64,000 nucleotides of DNA, taken from positions 209,026-273,025 of IMG/VR virus record IMGVR_UViG_3300020442_000005; one strand, 5' to 3'. A model generated the notes under the pieces. It was not told where the DNA came from and did not search any database. It saw only the letters and a list, made by a program, of their open reading frames with translations. Positions within the stretch are counted from its first letter, which is position 1. The number at the start of each line of letters is the position of its first letter. A program made the position numbers and the translations under genes. Below are positions 10,477-20,395 of this stretch, piece after piece.

Positions 10477-10920
10477 ATGAGTTCTGAATCAACACCAAAA
10501 CCAAAAAGAAAAAGAAACTGGGCAAAGAACAGAGATATTCTGAAAGCTATACCAAACCCTTCCGGGGATGCGTATGAGATTAAAATGAAAATACCTGAGC
10601 TTACATTTGAAGGTGTTCGATCTCAGCCGGATTTTGCTAATCTGTATATCACTTTTTACCCGGGCAAAAAAGTTATTGAGCTTAAGTCATTGAAAGAATA
10701 TTTCTTTGCTTTTAGATCACAAATATATTCATATGAAAGAATCATCAATGTTATCTACGATGATATGATGGCTGTGTATGAACCAACAAGATTGCGACTG
10801 GTCATGACTTGTAATCCTCGTGGTGGGATCTCGTCTAAATTAACTGTAGATTCAGACTGGGGAGTTCGTGGTGGCAATGACCAGTTTATGGATTGGGTAG
10901 GGCAAAAAGAAGAATGGTAA
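10477..10920 (+). CDS. queF: QueF-family T-fold protein lacking the catalytic Cys
   Basis: PE.T...QPDFA, ELKSLK.Y, PRGGI motifs; CP.TG replaced by GVRS. Confidence 0.8.
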
Positions 10921-13900
10921 GTTTTGATAAAAATCAGATCTATATTATTGATGGTGCAATGGGCACCGAAATACAGAAAAGACAGGTTGAATCCAAATTC
11001 TTTAAATACGAAGGAATCGACTGCGATGGCTTTAATGATATTTTGGTGCTCACCAAACCCGGCCTGATAAAAGATATACACGGTGATTACATCAACTCCG
11101 GCGCAAATATCATTGAGACAAATACCTTTAACGCTAATTATATTTCAGCGTTAGATTACGGACTTAGTGATGGAGCGATCGATAAAATAAACTTTAGCGC
11201 TGCCAAAATTGCAAAACAGGCTGCAAAAAAATCTAAAGAAGAGGTGTATGTAGCCGGTGTTTTAGGCCCGACTTCAAAAACTTTAAGCATGTCACCAAAC
11301 GTTACAGATCCTTCTTATAGAGATATCACGTACCATGAATTACTCAATGCTTATAAAGCCGCAACTGAAAATCTAATTCGTGGTGGCGCAGATTTGATTT
11401 TAATCGAAACAGTCTTTGACACACTTAATGCCAAGGCTGCGATTGAGGCTGTGAGACTGGTAGGAGAAGATATTCCTATCATGATATCAGGTACAATCGT
11501 TGACATGTCTGGTCGGACTTTATCTGGCCAGACTGTCGAGGCTTTTTGGAATTCCATTAAACACGCAAGGCCTATTAGTGTTGGTTTGAATTGTGCGCTA
11601 GGTGCAAAGCAAATGGATCCATTTCTGCGGCGTCTAGCAGACGTCAGTGGTTGCGCAATCAGCGCACATCCGAACGCGGGGTTACCAAACGAATTAGGTG
11701 AATACGACCAATCCCCGTCTGATATGGCAAACTATATTAAGAACTGGGCAAAAGCCGGGATTGTAAATATAATAGGTGGATGTTGTGGGTCGACTCCGGA
11801 TCACATCAAAAAGATAGCCAACACCGTAAAAAAGTTTAAACCCAAAAGGCACATAACCAGAAGTTTTAATTTGGACCGGTCAATGATTCTTTCTGGTTTA
11901 GAGGTCTTTGATAGCAAAGGAAAGAACTTTATTAATATTGGCGAGCGAACAAACGTCACTGGGTCTTCAAGGTTTAAAAAATGTATCGTAGAAAAAAGAT
12001 ATGATGATGCGTTGAATATTGCTCGTTCGCAGATTCTAAATGGCGCCCAGATTATCGATATCAATATGGACGATGGACTCTTAGATTCTAAGAGTGAAAT
12101 GATTAATTTTTTAAAAATGTTGGCATGCGAGCCTGATATTGCAAAAGTACCAATCATGCTTGATTCTTCGAAGTGGGATATCCTATCGGAAGCCATGAGA
12201 TGGATACAAGGGAAAGGTATTGTAAATTCAATTTCTCTTAAAGATGGAGAATCAGACTTTCTTGCCCGGGCAAAAGAAATTGTTTCGTGCGGACACGCTT
12301 TTGTGGTAATGGCTTTTGATGAAAAAGGGCAGGCTGATACTTTTGATAGAAAAATAGAGATATGTGAACGCGCTTATTGGATTTTAGTTAACGCAGGAAT
12401 AAAGCCACAAGACATTATTTTTGATCCAAATATCTTTGCAATCGCCACCGGGATAGAAGAACACGACAACTATGCAGTCGACTTTATAACTGCTACTGCA
12501 TGGATTAAAAAGAACCTGCCTGGATGCTACGTCTCCGGAGGATTATCAAACCTATCATTCTCTTTCAGGGGAAATCCTCGCGTGAGAGAGATGATGCATT
12601 CCGTCTTTTTGTTTCATGCTATCAAAGCCGGGTTGGACATGGCGATTGTAAACGCAGGTCAACTAATGGTGTACGACCAGATCGATCAAGGCCATCGGGA
12701 CATTGTTGAATCTGTTATTTTAAATAAGCATGAAGAAGCATCGGCACAGCTTTTAGAATTAGCAAAATCTCTATCTGGTAAAACCCGAGTAGAATCTAAC
12801 GGGTTCCAAGAATGGCGTAACGAAGAGGTTGAAGAAAGAATATCTTTTGCCCTTATAAACGGTATCGATAAATTTATCGTCGAAGATGTCAAGGAATGTT
12901 ACAACAAAATAGGCTCGGCATTAAACGTTGTTGAAGGACCGTTGATGGATGGTATGAACGTAGTTGGAGACCTTTTTGGCTCCGGTAAAATGTTTTTACC
13001 TCAAGTAGTCAAGTCAGCGCGTGTAATGAAAAAAGCAGTCTCGTGGCTCGAGCCTTTTATGGTTGGCACAGATGAAGCAATACAGAGGGAAAAAATACTG
13101 CTTGCCACAGTTAAAGGCGACGTTCATGACATTGGAAAAAACATTGTTAGTATAGTTCTTCAATGTAATGGATACGAGATAGTTGATCTAGGAGTCATGG
13201 TTCCATTAGAAAAGATACTAGAGGAAGCTGATAAACACCAGGTTGCAGCAATCGGTCTTAGCGGATTGATTACACCAAGTTTAGATGAGATGGTTAAAGT
13301 TGCTCGAGCAATGAATGAAAGACAAATGGATATACCTTTACTAATTGGTGGAGCAACAACATCAAAAGTTCACACGGCAATCAAAATATCTCCGGAGTAC
13401 TCAAAAACAGTATATATACAAAATGCATCGATTGCAGTCGGAATTGTTAATGACGTGTTAAGTAAGAGTGATGCATTCGATAAGATTAATAGGGATTATG
13501 AAGAAACTAGGGAGAGAAGAAACTCGAGAAAGCAAACGTTTGTAAGTGTTTCTGATGCAAGAAGAAATGCATATCAGCTAAAAGGAAAGCCACAGATTCC
13601 AGATAACTTTGGAATGACTATCAAAAGCAAAGCTTCAGTTTCAGAGATCATACCATATATTGATTGGGCACCGTTTGCAATGACTTGGGGAATGAAACCA
13701 AAAGATCTTACAAGCCAAGTCGGTAAAGATCTAATGAAGGATGCCCGAGAAATGCTTCGAAAACTTGATGATAAGATTGTAGTTAACTATTCATTTGCTA
13801 TCGATAAATGTACAAAAACAAATAATGACGATGTACTGGTGAAAAGACCGGATAAATCAACGACTTTTAATTTCATGAGGCAAGCAACAAAAAAATCTCG

Positions 13901-14429
13901 GCCGAATCTTTGTTTGACAGATTTCTTACATCAGGAAGATTGGATAGGGTCTTTTGCGGTCTGGGTGTGCGGAATCGATAAGAGAGCAGACATGCTCAGA
14001 TTAGCCAACGATGATTACGGATCGATCATGATGCAAGCGCTTGGGGATAGACTCGCCGAAGCAACGGCTGAATGGCTACACGAGAGGGTTCGTAAGTCAT
14101 GGTGGGGTTACTCAAAAGACGAAAACTTGACAAATACCGACCTTATAAAAGAGCGTTACTTAGGAATCAGGCCAGCACCCGGATATCCAGCCTGTCCGGA
14201 TCATACCCAGAAGATAAAAATATTAAACTGGTTAGAAATTAGTGATACAATAGAGCTGACCGAGGGTTTAACAATGTCGCCAAAGTCCGCAATATGTGGT
14301 TGGTACTTTGCAAGTGCAGAATCAAAATACTTCGGTGTTGGAAAAATACCAGACGAATACGTAGAAGATTTAAAAGAAAGAAATCCATATCTAAAAAAAT
14401 ACAAAAATCATATAACGGGAGTTAGTTAA
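10914..14429 (+). CDS. metH: cobalamin-dependent methionine synthase
   Basis: [40 protein letters not shown] (DxHxxG), [12 protein letters not shown] activation domain. Confidence 0.97.
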
Positions 14430-14430
14430 C

Positions 14431-15759
14431 ATGGATAAATTTACAGATTACAAAGTCGCAGATACAAATCTATGGCGTTGGGGAAAAGACGAGGTAGAAT
14501 TAGCAGAACATGAAATGCCAGGCCTCATGGCACTGCGTGAAAAGTATGCAGCAGACAAACCACTTCAAGGAGCTAGAATTGCCGGGTGTTTGCATATGAC
14601 AATCCAGACCGCTGTTTTAATCGACACTCTTGTCGAGCTTGGCGCAGATGTACGTTGGATGACGTGTAATATCTATTCGACACAAGATCACGCCGCGGCA
14701 TACATTGCAGAGCAGCAAATCCCAGTGTTTGCTTGGAAGGGAATGACCGAGGATGACTATGAGGAATGTTTAGAAAAAGTCTTATGGTTCGATGAAGGCG
14801 TAGGTCCAAACATGATTCTAGATGACGGTGGTGACCTCACAGGATATATCCTGAAGAACCATCCGGATCTTTATAAGGATATTAAGGGTATCTCCGAAGA
14901 GACAACTACTGGTGTTTTAAGATTGGTAGAGTATCAAAACGATGGGGTCCTGCCGGTACCTTGCTTTAACGTTAACGATTCTGTTACTAAATCAAAGTTT
15001 GACAACAAGTACGGATGTCGTGAGTCGTGTGTTGATGCGATTCGAAGAGCGACAGACATCATGATGGCGGGAAAAGTTGCGACTGTGGCTGGCTATGGCG
15101 ACGTAGGTAAAGGTTCTGCTGCTAGTCTGTCCGCGGCTGGCTGTCGTGTTATTGTCACTGAGATCGATCCAATCTGTGCATTGCAAGCCGTAATGGACGG
15201 ATTCCAGGTTTTACCTATGGACGAAGCGGTTAAGCAATCCGACATTGTAGTTACAGCAACCGGTAATTGCGACGTGGTTAGATCAGAACATTTTTCCAAT
15301 ATGAAAGACAACGTTATCGTTTGTAACATTGGACATTTTGATAACGAGATCGATGTAGCATGGTTAAACGAGAACTTCGAATCCAAAAACGTAAAACCAC
15401 AGGTCGACGTATATTATCTTCCGTCCGGACTGACTGATAATAAACCAAATCCTCCGTACAAGAAGATCGTTCTGTTAGCACAGGGAAGACTAGTGAATCT
15501 AGGTTGCGCCACCGGGCATCCAAGCTTTGTTATGTCCTGTTCTTTTGCAAATCAGGTACTTGCACAGATCGAGTTATTTTTGAACTCTGATAATTATGAA
15601 AATAAAGTTTATGTGCTCCCAAAGATTCTTGACGAAGAGGTTGCCAGATTGCATCTCGATCACGTTGGCGCCAAACTCGATAAACTTTCAAACGTTCAGT
15701 CGAAATACATTGGCGTGAAACAAACCGGTCCATTTAAGTCTGACGAATATCGTTACTAG
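14431..15759 (+). CDS. ahcY: S-adenosylhomocysteine hydrolase
   Basis: [67 protein letters not shown]. Confidence 0.97.
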
Positions 15760-18366: not shown

Positions 18367-18756
18367 ATGGAATTAACAAATGGCCAGATTGAGATAGGTA
18401 TAGTGTTTTTCTATGGCTTTGTAGCAGGATTAGTTGTCAGTATTCTGTATGCTCATGAGCGTTGGAAAAACTTCAACTACGACGAGGAACGACGGTTACA
18501 ATATCAAAAAGAAACGGATGAAAGAAGAAGGATACGCCTTGAGAAATATAAAGAGATGAGAAATCCTGAATCTCAGTTACGAGTGATACATAAGCAGGAA
18601 GAATATATAAGAGAATTACTCTTAGAGCAAGCTAGACTGCACAAACAACTCAATGCATTCGCTGGATGGCCTGAATATGAACACTTCCACGAAGATCTTA
18701 TGAAAAAAATCGACAAACGATTTGAATCTTTACGAATTGAACATGATAACATTTGA
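18367..18756 (+). CDS. hypothetical membrane protein
   Basis: N-terminal TM helix followed by coiled coil. Confidence 0.65.
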   Translation: MELTNGQIEIGIVFFYGFVAGLVVSILYAHERWKNFNYDEERRLQYQKETDERRRIRLEKYKEMRNPESQLRVIHKQEEYIRELLLEQARLHKQLNAFAGWPEYEHFHEDLMKKIDKRFESLRIEHDNI

Positions 18757-18781
18757 ACAACTACAGGACTATCTGTATAAT
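18752..18781 (+). promoter_or_regulatory. sigma70-like promoter of tRNA cluster
   Basis: TTGAAC-N17-TATAAT with TG just upstream of the -10. Confidence 0.65.
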
Positions 18782-18803
18782 AACTAGGTAAACAAAACTT
18801 CAT

Positions 18804-18877
18804 GCATCCATAGCTCAGCTGGATAGAGCATCCGCCTTCTAAGCGGACGGTCGCAGGTTCGAATCCTGCTGGATGTA
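18804..18877 (+). tRNA. tRNA-Arg(TCT)
   Basis: TCCGC-CTTCTAA-GCGGA anticodon arm, canonical D and T arms. Confidence 0.95.
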
Positions 18878-18881
18878 CTTT

Positions 18882-18953
18882 TGGTCTGTAGTGTAATAGG
18901 TAACACACCAGTTTTTGGCACTGGCGTTCTAGGTTCAAGTCCTGGCAGACCAG
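18882..18953 (+). tRNA. tRNA-Gln(TTG)
   Basis: TGGTCTG/CAGACCA acceptor, CCAGT-TTTTGGC-ACTGG anticodon arm. Confidence 0.92.
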
Positions 18954-18991
18954 CTTTTATACAACTTTAAACAATAGGGTATTATTATTTA

Positions 18992-19142
18992 TGGGTCTAG
19001 TTAACCTCGAGGGTTCGAACCCCTCTATGACCAAGCAGGCAGGGAGCAATGACTAGATGTCGCCAACAGAAAGATATTCACCAGTATCTCCTTTTGGTTG
19101 ATAAGCCTTGGGATAGGAAAGTGGTGAGTCCTATCCCAAAGT
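18992..19142 (+). ncRNA. candidate structured ncRNA containing a tRNA T-arm
   Basis: own promoter-like site 18956-18988; GAGGG-TTCGAAC-CCCTC T arm enclosed by GTCTAGTTA/TGACTAGAT; perfect 11-bp hairpin 19108-19139. Confidence 0.55.
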
Positions 19143-19164
19143 TCCATCCTTAACTTCATCACAC

Positions 19165-19237
<73 letters not shown>

Positions 19238-19240
19238 TAG

Positions 19241-19313
19241 GCGGGAATAGCTCAGTTGGTAGAGCACCACGTTGCCAACGTGGAAGTCGCGAGTTCAAGT
19301 CTCGTTTCCCGCT
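19241..19313 (+). tRNA. tRNA-Gly(GCC)
   Basis: GCGGGAA acceptor, CCACG-TTGCCAA-CGTGG. Confidence 0.95.
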
Positions 19314-19318
19314 CTTTT

Positions 19319-19391
19319 GGACACTTAGCTCAGCGGTCAGAGCATCCGACTCATAATCGGCAGGTCCAGGGTTCAATCCCCTGAGTGTCCA
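19319..19391 (+). tRNA. tRNA with CAT anticodon, probably Ile2 (lysidine, reads AUA) rather than Met
   Basis: GACTCATAATC anticodon arm and GG..C.TTAGCTCAG start resemble bacterial tRNA-Ile2; lacks the initiator GGG/CCC stem. Confidence 0.85.
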
Positions 19392-19396
19392 CTTTC

Positions 19397-19480
19397 GTTC
19401 GGCTGTACGGTTGCAGATAACTAACGTGGGCAGGCAATATTTAACGTTAGAATTGCGGGGTTCAAATCCCCGCCCGAACA
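19397..19480 (+). ncRNA. non-canonical tRNA-like RNA (6+6 bp acceptor/T stack, 16-nt anticodon-position loop)
   Basis: GTTCGG/CCGAAC-A; CTGTA-CGGT-TGCAG; CTAACGT-N16-ACGTTAG; GCGGGG-TTCAAAT-CCCCGC. Confidence 0.7.
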
Positions 19481-19537
19481 TTTTTTTGACATATATATAA
19501 TATACTATATATTACATGTTAGCGTCATGGAGAAATA

Positions 19538-20395
19538 ATGATCGGACATACACCATTCATCTGTATTGACAATGATGAAAGAATATGGGCAAAACTAGAA
19601 ACACACAATAAAACCGGATCTGTAAAAGATCGAATGATTGATTACATATGCGATAATGCTCTTGCAAATGGTGCAATCATTCCTGGAAAGACCCGGCTCA
19701 TTGAGGCAACCAGTGGAAATACTGGAATTGCTTTAGCCAGTTATGCAGCCTCAGTGGGATGCAAATGCCAAATCATAATGCCATGTAACATGTCGGAAGA
19801 AAGAAAACAAATGATGCATGCGTTCGGCGCCGAAATTATAGAAACCGGCCCAAACGAATTTGGACGTGCAATTGCGATGAGAGACTTGAAACTGCGGAAG
19901 TCTAACCCCGGAGAATATTTCTCGCCTCTTCAATTTAGTAATCCTTTAAATGTGGAATGTCACAGAACAACCACAGCGCCAGAGATTCACCAGAACATAA
20001 CAGACATTAAGTGTCTCGCTTGGGATGCATTCGTGCATGGCTCTGGAACTGGAGGGACTATGATGGGATTGAAGAGTTACATTGATGAGAATAGGTTAGG
20101 AGTGAAATGCGTCTTAACTCAGCCGGAAGAAGATAACGCATCCCATGGAATACAGGGCATTAACGATGGTGCTGATTTTCTATTAGATAAGTCATTGATG
20201 GATGAGTTTATATACGTGAAGACGTCCTCAGCAATTGAACGAATGAAGAGATTCTGGAAAGAAAATGGTATCCTGATCGGCATCAGTTCCGGGGCAAACA
20301 TTCTGGCTGCAGAAGAATACGTGAGAAAGCATGATCCAGCTGGAATCGTCGTCACTATTTTATGTGATCGTGGAGAAAGATATTTAAAATGTTGA
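19538..20395 (+). CDS. cysK: PLP-dependent cysteine synthase (CysK/CysM family)
   Basis: AKLE..N.TGSVKDR, EATSGNTGIALA, GSGTGGT, HGIQG, GISSGA, CDRGERY; TTGACA/TATATT promoter upstream. Confidence 0.9.
   Translation: MIGHTPFICIDNDERIWAKLETHNKTGSVKDRMIDYICDNALANGAIIPGKTRLIEATSGNTGIALASYAASVGCKCQIIMPCNMSEERKQMMHAFGAEIIETGPNEFGRAIAMRDLKLRKSNPGEYFSPLQFSNPLNVECHRTTTAPEIHQNITDIKCLAWDAFVHGSGTGGTMMGLKSYIDENRLGVKCVLTQPEEDNASHGIQGINDGADFLLDKSLMDEFIYVKTSSAIERMKRFWKENGILIGISSGANILAAEEYVRKHDPAGIVVTILCDRGERYLKC

What the first reader, a model, noticed from the sequence alone, without database searches (positions are those of the whole stretch)
19397..19480. Non-canonical tRNA-like gene with intact stems but no normal anticodon loop
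Seen: last unit of the tRNA operon, 5 nt after the CAT tRNA and followed by a T run. It has a 6-bp acceptor plus 6-bp T stem (12 bp total as in tRNA), a 5-bp D stem with CGGT loop and no U8/9 linker, and a 7-bp stem with a 16-nt loop GGGCAGGCAATATTTA. All stems pair fully, which argues against decay. GCAGGCA also occurs in the 18992 element. Inference: a tRNA scaffold displaying a guide or decoy loop, or a tRNA with an excised insert.
Basis: partly seen in the sequence, partly recalled or inferred. Interest (0 to 1): 0.65.

Follow-up and report, generated by a model that had tools for sequence, protein, structure and literature searches.

The report
Conserved non-decoding tRNA-like phage RNA
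The last unit of this marine jumbo phage's tRNA operon is a conserved RNA family with a normal tRNA top half and no anticodon loop, so it very likely uses tRNA handling machinery for a job other than decoding; that job is still unknown.

Summary
ARAGORN at default settings and Rfam do not call it.

It is not decay. I found 27 homologs (18 distinct) in uncultured marine phage contigs. Acceptor, long-arm and T stems show compensatory changes: 98% of cells are paired against 35-41% in slid controls, and 0 of 500 shuffles reach the observed values. The D arm plus linker (21 nt) is invariant. The element is as conserved as the co-resident tRNA-Arg (80-99% vs 62-92%), while core proteins share only 34-65% identity.

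In most members the "16-nt loop" is a 4-bp inner helix with an AGGC tip and an A/U-rich 3' bulge. Only AGGC is universal.

The intron/ochre-suppressor reading fails:
- The putative anticodon is not conserved.
- TAA is the commonest stop.
- The phage has no splicing endonuclease.

No complementary targets are enriched, and the GCAGGCA link to the 18992 element is chance.

Best reading: a non-decoding tRNA mimic, matured like a tRNA, whose remodelled lower half binds a partner, more likely protein than RNA. It has no Rfam family and no cultured-phage or cellular homolog. The closest analogue is T4 rnaC.

The parts
19397..19480 (+). Whole tRNA-like RNA gene (84 nt), the window's copy of the family
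   Evidence: MFE equals centroid cloverleaf, z = -3.1. Family models R1 and R2 score 117 bits here, and homologs score 76-117 bits.
19397..19402 (+). Acceptor stem 5' strand (GUUCGG), pairing with 19474-19479 (CCGAAC)
   Evidence: 100% of cells paired in 18 distinct sequences. 4 of 6 pairs show changes on both sides.
19403..19416 (+). D arm CUGUA-CGGU-UGCAG: 5-bp stem with a conserved U.G wobble and a 4-nt loop, no 8/9 linker
   Evidence: Invariant in all 18 distinct sequences. E. coli selC has the same loop sequence and the same long-stem design.
19417..19420 (+). AUAA linker between the D arm and the long arm; part of the invariant 21-mer GCUGUACGGUUGCAGAUAACU
   Evidence: Invariant. The 20/21-mer retrieves only family members from IMG/VR. 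It gave one chance hit in 596 Gb of cellular genomes.
19421..19450 (+). Long arm replacing the anticodon arm: 7-bp stem (19421-19427 / 19444-19450) and 16-nt loop GGGCAGGCAAUAUUUA (19428-19443)
   Evidence: Two stem pairs covary as a block (CUAACG/CGUUAG to CUGAUG/CAUCAG), and the closing seventh pair (U-A here) is variable. In 11 of 18 distinct relatives the loop forms a full 4-bp inner helix (GGGC/GCUC, GGGC/GCYU, GGUC/GACC) with an AGGC-containing tip and an A/U-rich 3' bulge. In the window copy the helix is reduced to G.U pairs.
19451..19473 (+). AAUU linker plus T arm GCGGGG-UUCAAAU-CCCCGC (6-bp stem, canonical T loop)
   Evidence: The block AGAAUUGNNGGGUUCAAAUCCC is invariant. All 28 IMG/VR matches to it are family members, cut-off copies of the family at contig ends, or the reduced L106 relative. 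One T-stem pair covaries.
19474..19480 (+). Acceptor 3' strand CCGAAC plus discriminator A; no encoded CCA
   Evidence: The discriminator A is invariant.
19481..19513 (+). T-run (19481-19487) overlapping a sigma-70-like promoter TTGACA-16-TATATT (19486-19513) for the downstream PLP-enzyme gene
   Evidence: Promoter scan gives 11/12, and no simple terminator hairpin is called. The T-run occurs only in the jumbo-phage clade, not in the other members.
18753..19392 (+). Rest of the transcription unit: promoter-like TTGAAC-17-TATAAT (18753-18781), tRNA-Arg, tRNA-Gln, a ~170-nt structured RNA, tRNA-Thr, tRNA-Gly and tRNA-Met

Best explanation
It is a gene for a stable, non-decoding tRNA mimic, and a member of a previously undescribed RNA family of uncultured marine phages.

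Shown: the upper half is kept by selection. This is the 12-bp acceptor/T coaxial stack, the canonical T loop, a GG-containing D loop able to form the elbow, and discriminator A.

Inferred: those are the parts read by RNase P, the 3'-end trimming and CCA-adding enzymes and the T-loop modification enzymes. The RNA is therefore probably cut out of the tRNA-operon transcript and stabilised exactly like a tRNA, using host enzymes, because the phage encodes none of its own.

Shown: the lower half cannot decode. There is no 7-nt anticodon loop, no conserved U33 and no conserved triplet. It is rebuilt into an invariant D arm plus linker, and a long arm (7 bp plus, in most members, a 4-bp inner helix) that carries a conserved AGGC tip beside an A/U-rich bulge.

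Inferred: this rebuilt half is the working end, a specific binding surface for a partner that the RNA sequesters, recruits or regulates in trans during infection. A protein partner is more likely than an RNA one. The conserved tip is only 4 nt, the invariant part includes base-paired stem positions and a fixed U.G wobble, and no complementary targets are enriched. In short, it looks like a natural 'tRNA scaffold' carrying a small payload.
For: Structure:
- There are 27 homologs, 18 distinct.
- 98.1% of cells are paired against 35-41% in slid controls.
- 8 pairs show both-side changes, and 0 of 500 shuffles reach the observed values.

Selection:
- Element identity is 80-99%, against 62-92% for the co-resident tRNA-Arg(UCU).
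- SSB, UvsX and prohead protease share only 34-65% amino-acid identity.
- The element sits in different genomic contexts: last in a tRNA operon, after a small ORF, after hairpins, or with no tRNA nearby.

Non-decoding:
- No tRNA call by ARAGORN or Rfam.
- The loop varies in length and sequence, and only AGGC is fixed.

Upper half:
- The T loop UUCAAAU and D loop CGGU are invariant.
- E. coli tRNA-Sec has the same D-loop sequence and long-stem design, which shows the design is compatible with a working tRNA elbow.
- RNase P is known to process tRNA-like non-tRNA substrates, including phage regulatory RNAs (PMC4919922).

Host machinery: the phage encodes no CCA-adding enzyme.

Protein rather than antisense partner: no GCCTGCCC anywhere in 273 kb and the 7-mers are at or below expectation. 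Complements to the D arm are at chance.

Expression (weak): in one seawater metatranscriptome, contigs cover a relative's element at the same depth as the adjoining tRNA-Met.
Against: - No partner has been identified.
- Processing, CCA addition, stability and abundance have not been observed. The RNA-library evidence is contigs only, and DNA carry-over is not excluded. A seawater ncRNA-Seq library showed nothing over the element, although the phage may simply be absent from that sample.
- The window's own copy has lost the inner helix, so the 'payload' is not structurally uniform.
- The host is unknown, so host RNA targets could not be searched.
- The three more distant relatives lack the element, so it is not essential to the lineage.
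Confidence: 0.5

Rival explanations
1. Cis-acting processing and termination module ('tRNA punctuation'). The cloverleaf serves only as an RNase P / RNase Z cleavage signal and a 3'-end protective structure. It separates the upstream transcript from the downstream promoter or gene, and the released RNA has no function of its own.
For: - It always lies between transcription units, co-directional with its neighbours.
- In the jumbo clade it ends the tRNA operon, followed directly by a T-run and the next promoter.
- In other members it follows terminator-like hairpins or a small ORF and precedes promoter-like sites.
- RNase P cleaves tRNA-like structures in mRNAs and lncRNAs (PMC4919922).
Against: - A processing signal needs only the acceptor/T stack and the elbow. 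It does not explain a 21-nt invariant D arm plus linker with a fixed U.G wobble, or the universally conserved AGGC tip with a compensated inner helix.
- The T-run is clade-specific.
- Ordinary tRNAs already present could do this job.
Confidence: 0.2
2. C4-type antisense or guide RNA. The tRNA-like body provides RNase P processing and stability, and the exposed loop (GGGCAGGC... in the window) base-pairs with a phage or host RNA.
For:
- GGGCAGGCR is conserved in 16 of 18 distinct members.
- In the window copy it is single-stranded.
Against: - There is no complementary 8-mer in the 273-kb genome, and the 7-mers are at or below expectation.
- In most members GGGC is paired inside the arm, and subtype C changes it to GGUC with a compensating change. 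That shows selection for the helix rather than for the sequence.
- Only 4 nt are universal.
- There is no Rfam C4 match.
- Host transcripts could not be tested.
Confidence: 0.12
3. A chargeable tRNA-like adaptor. After CCA addition it is aminoacylated by a synthetase that does not read the anticodon, and the aminoacyl group is used outside normal decoding, for example by an aminoacyl-tRNA-dependent transferase or in a tmRNA-like rescue-type role.
For: - The acceptor/T top half is intact, with an invariant G1-C72 pair and discriminator A.
- The elbow is intact.
- From general knowledge, several synthetases (Ala, Ser, Leu) ignore the anticodon.
Against: - There is no G3.U70; positions 3:70 are U-A, C-G or U-G.
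- There is no long variable arm.
- Similarity of the acceptor to the co-resident tRNA-Leu does not track across genomes.
- Nothing else of tRNA-Sec is present, and selC scores 7.5 bits with the family model.
- No candidate transferase was identified.
Confidence: 0.1
4. An intron-containing tRNA, specifically an ochre-suppressor tRNA(UUA) with a 13-nt insert, as ARAGORN calls it under relaxed settings.
For: ARAGORN -i -ps80 reports tRNA-Stop(tta) with a 13-nt intron. After removal the loop AUUUAAC would have U33 and A37.
Against: - The call needs a 2-bp D stem and an intron between positions 31 and 32.
- The same settings give about two spurious calls per kb.
- Relatives have UAUAAAC (A33, 'UAA') at the same place, and inserts of other lengths.
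- The phage uses the standard code with 91% ORF coverage, and TAA is the commonest stop at 117 of 201.
- It has no splicing endonuclease and only a sub-threshold RtcB fragment.
Confidence: 0.03
5. A decaying tRNA pseudogene or a chance fold.
For: tRNA finders do not recognise it. The single-sequence fold z-score is only -3.1.
Against: - Compensatory changes occur in three helices.
- A 21-mer is invariant.
- Conservation equals or exceeds that of a real tRNA, across phages whose proteins are 34-65% identical.
Confidence: 0.02

Closest known systems
Phage T4 species 1 RNA (rnaC) and species 2 RNA (rnaD)
   Same: They are small stable non-tRNA RNAs encoded as the last units of a phage tRNA operon, directly after tRNA-Arg. 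rnaC has a canonical T arm near its 3' end and end-to-end pairing, so it is tRNA-like. Their function is unknown, to my knowledge.
   Different: There is no detectable homology: rnaC scores 11 bits with the family model, the same as ordinary T4 tRNAs at 5-16 bits. They are larger (139 and 119 nt) with different arms. T4 infects enterobacteria, whereas this family is known only from marine metagenomes.
P1/P7 C4 antisense RNA (Rfam RF01695) and other phage regulatory RNAs matured by RNase P
   Same: A phage small RNA whose tRNA-like features let RNase P generate it, with the regulatory part displayed on hairpin loops (PMC4919922).
   Different: There is no Rfam match, no true T loop or D arm in C4 (from my knowledge), and no complementary target for this element.
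Bacterial tRNA-Sec (selC)
   Same: An extended D stem closed by the same 4-nt loop CGGU, and a non-7/5 split of the acceptor/T stack.
   Different: tRNA-Sec is 8/5 (13 bp) with a UCA anticodon loop and a long variable arm. This element is 6/6 (12 bp) with neither. selC scores 7.5 bits with the family model, out of register, and there is no Rfam tRNA-Sec hit.
Engineered 'tRNA scaffold' chimeras, in which a recombinant RNA replaces the anticodon arm (from my knowledge of Ponchon and Dardel 2007; not checked here)
   Same: The same design logic: keep the acceptor, T and D parts for processing and stability, and replace the anticodon stem-loop with a payload hairpin.
   Different: Those are artificial. 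This is a natural, evolutionarily conserved gene, and its D arm is also remodelled.
Y RNA-like YrlA (RF02553), tmRNA tRNA-like domain, mascRNA
   Same: Non-decoding RNAs that retain a tRNA-like acceptor/T/D module.
   Different: - YrlA is circularly rearranged and works with Ro. There is no Rfam hit on the element and no TROVE gene in the phage.
- tmRNA needs G3.U70 and a tag ORF, both absent here. The phage has a separate tmRNA gene.
- mascRNA matches only 17 nt of the T arm, at 17 bits.

Membership tests
Canonical tRNA (Rfam RF00005 / ARAGORN) | Score above the model threshold (RF00005 gathering score 29 bits; ARAGORN default) | tested here: not met
   No RF00005 hit even at E<=10. There is no ARAGORN call at default settings, with -ps, or with -i alone.
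Canonical tRNA (Rfam RF00005 / ARAGORN) | 5-bp anticodon stem with a 7-nt loop, U33, purine 37 and a conserved anticodon | tested here: not met
   The window has a 7-bp stem with a 16-nt loop. Relatives have loops of 16-21 nt with only AGGC conserved.
Canonical tRNA (Rfam RF00005 / ARAGORN) | 7-bp acceptor, U8/N9 linker, 3-4-bp D stem with a 7-11-nt loop | tested here: not met
   6-bp acceptor, no linker, 5-bp D stem with a 4-nt loop, in all members.
Canonical tRNA (Rfam RF00005 / ARAGORN) | T arm with a TPsiC-type loop, 12-bp acceptor/T stack, GG in the D loop for the elbow | tested here: met
   UUCAAAU loop, 6+6 = 12 bp, and an invariant D loop CGGU.
Intron-containing tRNA (archaeal-type BHB, or group I intron) | Bulge-helix-bulge motif at positions 37/38 or a group I intron core, plus a splicing endonuclease and ligase available | tested here: not met
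   - The insert is 9-14 nt, too short for group I.
- The structure has one 3' bulge only, with no 3-nt bulges either side of a 4-bp helix.
- ARAGORN places the intron at position 31/32.
- There is no tRNA_int_endo, and RtcB reaches only 14 bits against a 27-bit cut-off.
Suppressor tRNA of a recoded phage | In-frame stop codons or recoded stop usage in the genome, and a conserved suppressor anticodon | tested here: not met
   Table 11 gives 91% ORF coverage, and TAA is the commonest stop. The 'UUA' is not conserved in relatives.
tRNA-Sec (RF01852) | 13-bp acceptor/T stack (8/5), UCA anticodon, long variable arm, 6-bp D stem with a 4-nt loop | tested here: not met
   Only the D-arm design is shared (CGGU loop). 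The other three features are absent, there is no Rfam clan hit, and selC scores 7.5 bits with R2.
C4 antisense RNA (RF01695) | Match to the family model; loops complementary to a target in the phage | tested here: not met
   There is no Rfam hit, and no enriched complementary sites.
Y RNA-like / YrlA (RF02553) | Ro-binding helix with the termini in it, tRNA-like module closed by a loop, Ro (TROVE) partner | tested here: not met
   Rfam YrlA hits in the region fall across junctions of ordinary tRNAs, not on the element. No TROVE gene is present.
tmRNA tRNA-like domain | G3.U70 alanine identity pair and a tag reading frame | tested here: not met
   Positions 3:70 are U-A, C-G or U-G. The RNA is 84 nt with no ORF. 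The phage's tmRNA is elsewhere, at genome 9008-9366.
T4 rnaC-type stable RNA of phage tRNA operons | Encoded at the distal end of a phage tRNA operon; tRNA-like T arm and terminal pairing; non-decoding | tested here: met
   This is a functional and positional class, not a homology family.
T4 rnaC-type stable RNA of phage tRNA operons | Sequence/structure homology to rnaC or rnaD | tested here: not met
   R2 scores 11 bits on rnaC, within the range of ordinary tRNAs, and gives no hit on rnaD.
Any tRNA-like RNA | RNase P 5' processing, CCA addition, accumulation as a stable RNA | not testable with these tools
   Only metatranscriptome contigs were available. They cannot show ends or CCA.

The most novel reading that the evidence does not exclude
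Marine large phages use the tRNA top half as a general chassis for small effector RNAs, a natural counterpart of the engineered 'tRNA scaffold'.

On this reading, the following are all instances of one strategy:
- this family
- the unrelated 103-nt tRNA-like RNA in relative G001's tRNA cluster
- the 67-nt reduced form in L106
- perhaps T4 rnaC

In each case host RNase P and the CCA enzyme mature and stabilise the RNA, while a rebuilt lower half binds a host protein with aptamer-like specificity. Here that lower half is the invariant D arm with a fixed U.G wobble and the AGGC-tipped arm. A plausible partner is a tRNA-handling or tRNA-sensing factor such as a defence sensor or toxin, a modification enzyme or a ribosome-associated factor. 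Binding would help the phage take over the cell or evade immunity.
Probability: 0.3. Interest if true: 0.8.

Novelty: new variant of a known kind. Interest (0 to 1): 0.62.

Why it matters
Phage tRNA genes are usually explained by codon usage or, more recently, by escape from tRNA-cleaving defences. This element fits neither explanation. It cannot decode, yet it is conserved as strongly as a real tRNA across phages whose core proteins have diverged to 34-65% identity.

That points to a tRNA-shaped RNA with a specific non-translational job during infection. The half-century-old puzzle of T4's species 1 and 2 RNAs suggests such RNAs are a recurrent and unexplained feature of large phages.

The family offers an invariant 21-nt D arm and a 4-nt tip as mutational handles, and 18 natural variants. 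Its partner could therefore be found by pull-down, turning an old open question into a testable one.

Practically, it is also a class of gene that standard tRNA and Rfam annotation misses completely.

Tried and rejected
1. Exact searches of IMG/VR for the window's T arm plus acceptor gave 0 hits, and for the 16-nt loop gave 13 hits. All 13 were isolated 16-mers with no tRNA-like context, consistent with chance.

2. Synteny through the ORF embedded in the tRNA cluster (18367-18756) found no relatives.

3. Three relatives found through the PLP-enzyme gene in IMG/VR (64-74% identity) have tRNA clusters elsewhere and lack the element.

4. The intron/ochre-suppressor reading was rejected.

5. From memory, GGGCAGGC is complementary to a conserved 23S rRNA segment. 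I dropped this without testing for three reasons:
   - An 8-mer match to rRNA has roughly a 7% chance probability.
   - The motif is base-paired in most members.
   - Subtype C changes it with a compensating change.

6. Self-targeting guide: there are no enriched complements to the loop or the D arm in the 273-kb genome.

7. Shared identity with the co-resident tRNA-Leu(UAA): the acceptor stems do not track across genomes.

8. The link to the 18992 element through GCAGGCA is not conserved.

9. Cellular origin: the invariant 20-mer has one hit in 596 Gb of prokaryote genomes. That hit lies inside an ORF of a Bacteroidia MAG contig, and only the 20-mer matches (15.8 bits), which is what chance predicts.

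10. Cultured phages: there is no blastn hit in 50,697 records.

11. Expression: four RNA libraries were available as contigs only. One shows a relative's element, and one ncRNA-Seq library shows nothing. Neither can show ends, CCA or splicing.

12. Literature: three full-text searches found no description of this family.
Full report
**Setting**

The window is the last 64 kb of a 273,025-bp IMG/VR virus record estimated at 82% complete, so this is a jumbo phage. All six of its canonical tRNA genes lie in the window: Leu-UAA, Arg-UCU, Gln-UUG, Thr-UGU, Gly-GCC and Met-CAU. A tmRNA gene lies elsewhere in the genome.

The neighbours are methyl-cycle auxiliary genes: MetH, SAH hydrolase and a PLP-dependent cysteine-synthase-like enzyme. 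The phage uses the standard code, with 91% of the genome in ORFs of at least 100 aa. TAA is the commonest stop, closing 117 of 201 long ORFs.

**The observation**

The sequence at 19397-19480 is as described.
- a 6-bp acceptor
- a 5-bp D stem starting directly after the acceptor, with loop CGGU
- an AUAA linker
- a 7-bp stem closing a 16-nt loop GGGCAGGCAAUAUUUA
- an AAUU linker
- a 6-bp T stem with loop UUCAAAU
- discriminator A

The energy is -30.3 kcal/mol with z = -3.1. The element begins 5 nt after tRNA-Met and is followed by seven T.

ARAGORN (default, -ps, or -i alone) and Rfam do not call it. At E<=10 only a 17-nt T-arm match to mascRNA appears.

**The 'tRNA with an insert' reading**

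With introns allowed and the threshold lowered to 80%, ARAGORN reports tRNA-Stop(UUA) with a 13-nt intron. The drawn model has a 2-bp D stem and places the intron between positions 31 and 32. The same settings give 8-18 extra 'intron tRNAs' per 5-12 kb of related DNA, so the call has little specificity.

Other evidence also counts against it:
- The would-be anticodon loop is AUUUAAC in the window but UAUAAAC (A33, 'UAA') in relatives, and the 'insert' differs in length.
- An ochre suppressor makes no sense in a phage whose main stop is TAA.
- The genome has no tRNA splicing endonuclease, only a sub-threshold RtcB-like fragment, and no CCA-adding enzyme.

This reading is rejected.

**Homologs**

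Exact-sequence searches and three IMG/VR relatives found nothing. Relatives of the downstream PLP-enzyme gene in metagenome contigs then gave six loci with the element in the same place. These loci are 80-98% identical to the window's gene at the protein level.

Three further searches used blocks that proved invariant:
- the 21-mer GCTGTACGGTTGCAGATAACT
- its 16-mer core
- the block AGAATTGNNGGGTTCAAATCCC, also searched with GGGCAGGC ahead of it

These brought the family to 27 hits and 18 distinct sequences, scoring 76-117 bits with the single-sequence model. Three further copies cut off at contig ends and one reduced 67-nt relative also turned up.

All members come from uncultured marine, estuarine or seawater viral contigs. 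Near-identical DNA occurs in marine metagenomes of 14 studies. No cultured phage has it. The invariant 20-mer has a single hit in 596 Gb of prokaryote genomes. That hit lies inside an ORF, and only the 20-mer matches, as chance predicts.

**Covariation**

The 18 distinct sequences give these results on the stored structure:

| Measure | Result |
|---|---|
| Cells forming standard pairs | 98.1% (35-41% when partners are slid by 1-3 columns) |
| Pairs changed on both sides | 8 |
| Shuffles reaching the observed pairing, compensation or covariation score | 0 of 500 |
| Acceptor stem | 4 of 6 pairs with both-side changes |
| Long-arm stem | 3 of 7 |
| T stem | 1 of 6 |

The D arm never varies, including its U.G wobble. 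The invariant run extends through the AUAA linker, giving 21 nt in total. The model was derived from the window sequence, which favours the unslid structure. However, the compensatory changes are visible directly in the sequences. Examples are GUUCGG/CCGAAC, GCUCGG/CCGAGC, GCUCAG/CUGAGC and GCCCGG/CCGGGC in the acceptor, and CUAACG/CGUUAG against CUGAUG/CAUCAG in the long arm.

**What replaces the anticodon loop**

Across the family the region inside the 6-7-bp stem has four parts: GG(G/U)C, a 4-5-nt tip containing AGGC, a partner strand, and an A/U-rich tail of 4-9 nt.

- The four-base strands pair fully in 11 of 18 distinct sequences. The pairings are GGGC/GCUC, GGGC/GUUC, GGGC/GCUU, GGGC/GCCU, and the fully compensated GGUC/GACC.
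- Four more sequences form 3 of the 4 pairs.
- The window, L031 and L058 copies form only two G.U pairs.

The ancestral design is therefore a long arm: 7 bp, an asymmetric 3' bulge, a 4-bp helix and an AGGC tip. The window's open 16-nt loop is a derived, relaxed form. Only AGGC is universal.

**Strength of selection and contexts**

The element is 80-99% identical between genomes in which the co-resident tRNA-Arg(UCU) is 62-92% identical. In the same genomes SSB, UvsX and the prohead protease are 34%, 35% and 65% identical at the protein level, and they lie about 60 kb from the element in the jumbo phage.

Contexts differ between members:
- In the jumbo clade it is the last unit of the tRNA operon after tRNA-Met. 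It is followed by a T-run that overlaps a strong promoter-like site for the next gene (TTGACA-16-TATATT, 19486-19513).
- In a second clade it lies in the replication module, upstream of a gp32-like SSB gene. That clade carries family A DNA polymerase, UvsX and a ClpP-like protease. The element lies about 170 nt downstream of tRNA-Arg and directly after a small hydrophobic ORF, or directly after terminator-like hairpins, sometimes with no tRNA detected in the locus.

In every locus whose ORFs I listed, it lies on the same strand as most of the flanking long ORFs. The only constant is the RNA itself.

**Tests of function**

- Antisense guide. The 273-kb genome has no GCCTGCCC. Complements to the loop 7-mers are at or below expectation. 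Complements to the invariant D arm are at chance, with one 12-mer against 0.3 expected.
- The second element. The GCAGGCA shared with the 18992 element is not conserved in that element's L032 homolog. The chance of a shared 7-mer between a 16-nt loop and a 210-nt spacer is about 0.12.
- tRNA-Leu identity. Acceptor similarity to the co-resident tRNA-Leu does not track between genomes.
- Phage-encoded partners. There is no CCA enzyme, no splicing endonuclease, no Ro/TROVE protein, and only a sub-threshold RtcB-like fragment.
- Expression. In one rRNA-depleted seawater metatranscriptome, contigs cover a relative's element at a depth of about 29, equal to the adjoining tRNA-Met. In that relative the element precedes tRNA-Met. 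A seawater ncRNA-Seq library shows nothing over the element. Contigs cannot show ends, CCA or splicing, and DNA carry-over is possible.

**Interpretation**

Shown:
- It is a selected, structured, phage-specific RNA.
- Its upper half is canonical for a tRNA: a 12-bp acceptor/T stack, a T loop, GG in the D loop and discriminator A.
- Its lower half cannot decode.

Inferred from established knowledge of tRNA biology: RNase P, the 3'-end and CCA enzymes and the T-loop modifiers read the upper half. RNase P is documented to mature tRNA-like non-tRNA substrates, including phage regulatory RNAs and mascRNA (PMC4919922). The RNA is therefore most likely excised and stabilised by the host's tRNA machinery.

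Inferred from the pattern of conservation: the invariant D arm plus linker and the AGGC-tipped arm form a specific binding surface. A protein partner is more likely than an RNA partner. I put 0.5 on this trans-acting mimic/decoy/adaptor reading. The other readings rate as follows:

| Reading | Confidence |
|---|---|
| Purely cis processing/termination role | 0.2 |
| C4-like antisense role | 0.12 |
| Charged, non-decoding adaptor | 0.1 |
| Intron-containing or suppressor tRNA | 0.03 |
| Pseudogene or chance fold | 0.02 |

**Comparison with known RNAs**

The nearest analogue is T4 rnaC (species 1 RNA). It is also a tRNA-like stable RNA, encoded with rnaD at the distal end of the tRNA operon after tRNA-Arg. 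It is not homologous: it scores 11 bits, within the range of ordinary tRNAs.

The D arm copies the design of bacterial tRNA-Sec. E. coli selC has a 6-bp D stem with the same CGGU loop. Nothing else of tRNA-Sec is present.

C4 antisense RNA, YrlA, tmRNA and mascRNA each share the idea of a non-decoding tRNA-like module but fail their defining features here (see the membership table). The element behaves like a natural version of the engineered 'tRNA scaffold'.

Relatives carry other non-canonical tRNA-like RNAs. G001's tRNA cluster holds a 103-nt one (z = -5.3) and L106 holds a 67-nt one. This hints that such RNAs are a recurrent feature of these phages.

**Verdict**

The feature is real, and it is a new RNA family. 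In kind it belongs with the poorly understood tRNA-like small RNAs of large phages, so I rate it a new variant of a known kind. Its function is unknown but experimentally approachable. Interest is 0.62.

Noticed in passing
window 18990-19155 (+), within the 18955-19164 spacer between tRNA-Gln and tRNA-Thr: A second conserved structured RNA of about 170 nt lies in the same operon. Homologs are L034:2369-2546 and L032:1520-1690. RNAalifold predicts 53 pairs, and 16 of them keep pairing through changes on both sides in just three sequences. It contains a T-loop-like hairpin (GAGGGUUCGAACCCCUC) and has no Rfam match. It is probably another undescribed phage ncRNA, positioned like T4 rnaD/rnaC.
   Followed up: partly
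L013:1450-1552 (-) = G001:C1:1450-1552, between tRNA-Lys and tRNA-Met of a 236-kb relative: A different 103-nt non-canonical tRNA-like RNA. It has a 7-bp acceptor and a canonical T arm, but very long D-like and anticodon-like arms and no 8/9 linker. MFE is -40.3 kcal/mol with z = -5.3, and it scores only 21 bits with the family model.
   Followed up: partly
L106:953-1019 (-), on a 171-kb viral contig (97% complete): A 67-nt reduced tRNA-like element. It shares the AGAAUUG linker and T arm with the family but has a 3-bp D-like hairpin and a 6-nt loop GGAGAA on a stem of up to 10 bp. It lies between two protein genes with no tRNA nearby.
   Followed up: partly
window 10893-15759 and 19538-20395 (+): A cluster of methyl-cycle and sulfur auxiliary metabolic genes: full-length B12-dependent methionine synthase MetH (1178 aa), S-adenosylhomocysteine hydrolase (442 aa), and a PLP-dependent cysteine-synthase-like enzyme (285 aa) immediately downstream of the tRNA operon.
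   Followed up: no
G000:C1:9008-9366 (outside the window): The phage encodes its own tmRNA with the tag peptide ANNNDNFEVALAA.
   Followed up: no
L077 about 10890-10992 (+); the same in L063 and L098: In the second phage clade a Shine-Dalgarno-preceded ORF of about 32 aa, with a hydrophobic N-terminus, ends with a TAG whose G is the first base of the tRNA-like element. RNase P cleavage there would remove the stop codon from that mRNA.
   Followed up: no
L073 and L098, upstream of the element: Three or four tandem copies of a terminator-like hairpin module (aaggtttgcggc...gccgc plus a T-run) precede the element. It is unclear whether these are terminators, processing sites or repeats associated with a replication origin.
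   Followed up: no
window 19486-19513 and 18753-18781; L066, L072 and L075 downstream flanks: Strong sigma-70-type promoter-like sites (TTGACA/TATAAT class) flank the element in several members. The host remains unknown.
   Followed up: no
L077:10738-10823 (+): The tRNA-Arg(UCU) of this clade is 86 nt, about 10 nt longer than in the other members, so it appears to carry an unusual insertion or extra arm.
   Followed up: no
Metatranscriptome run X19, laid on window 19322-19477: One RNA-library contig joins a relative's copy of the element to tRNA-Met in the opposite order: element, an 18-nt spacer, then tRNA-Met. The order of units in the operon therefore varies among relatives.
   Followed up: no
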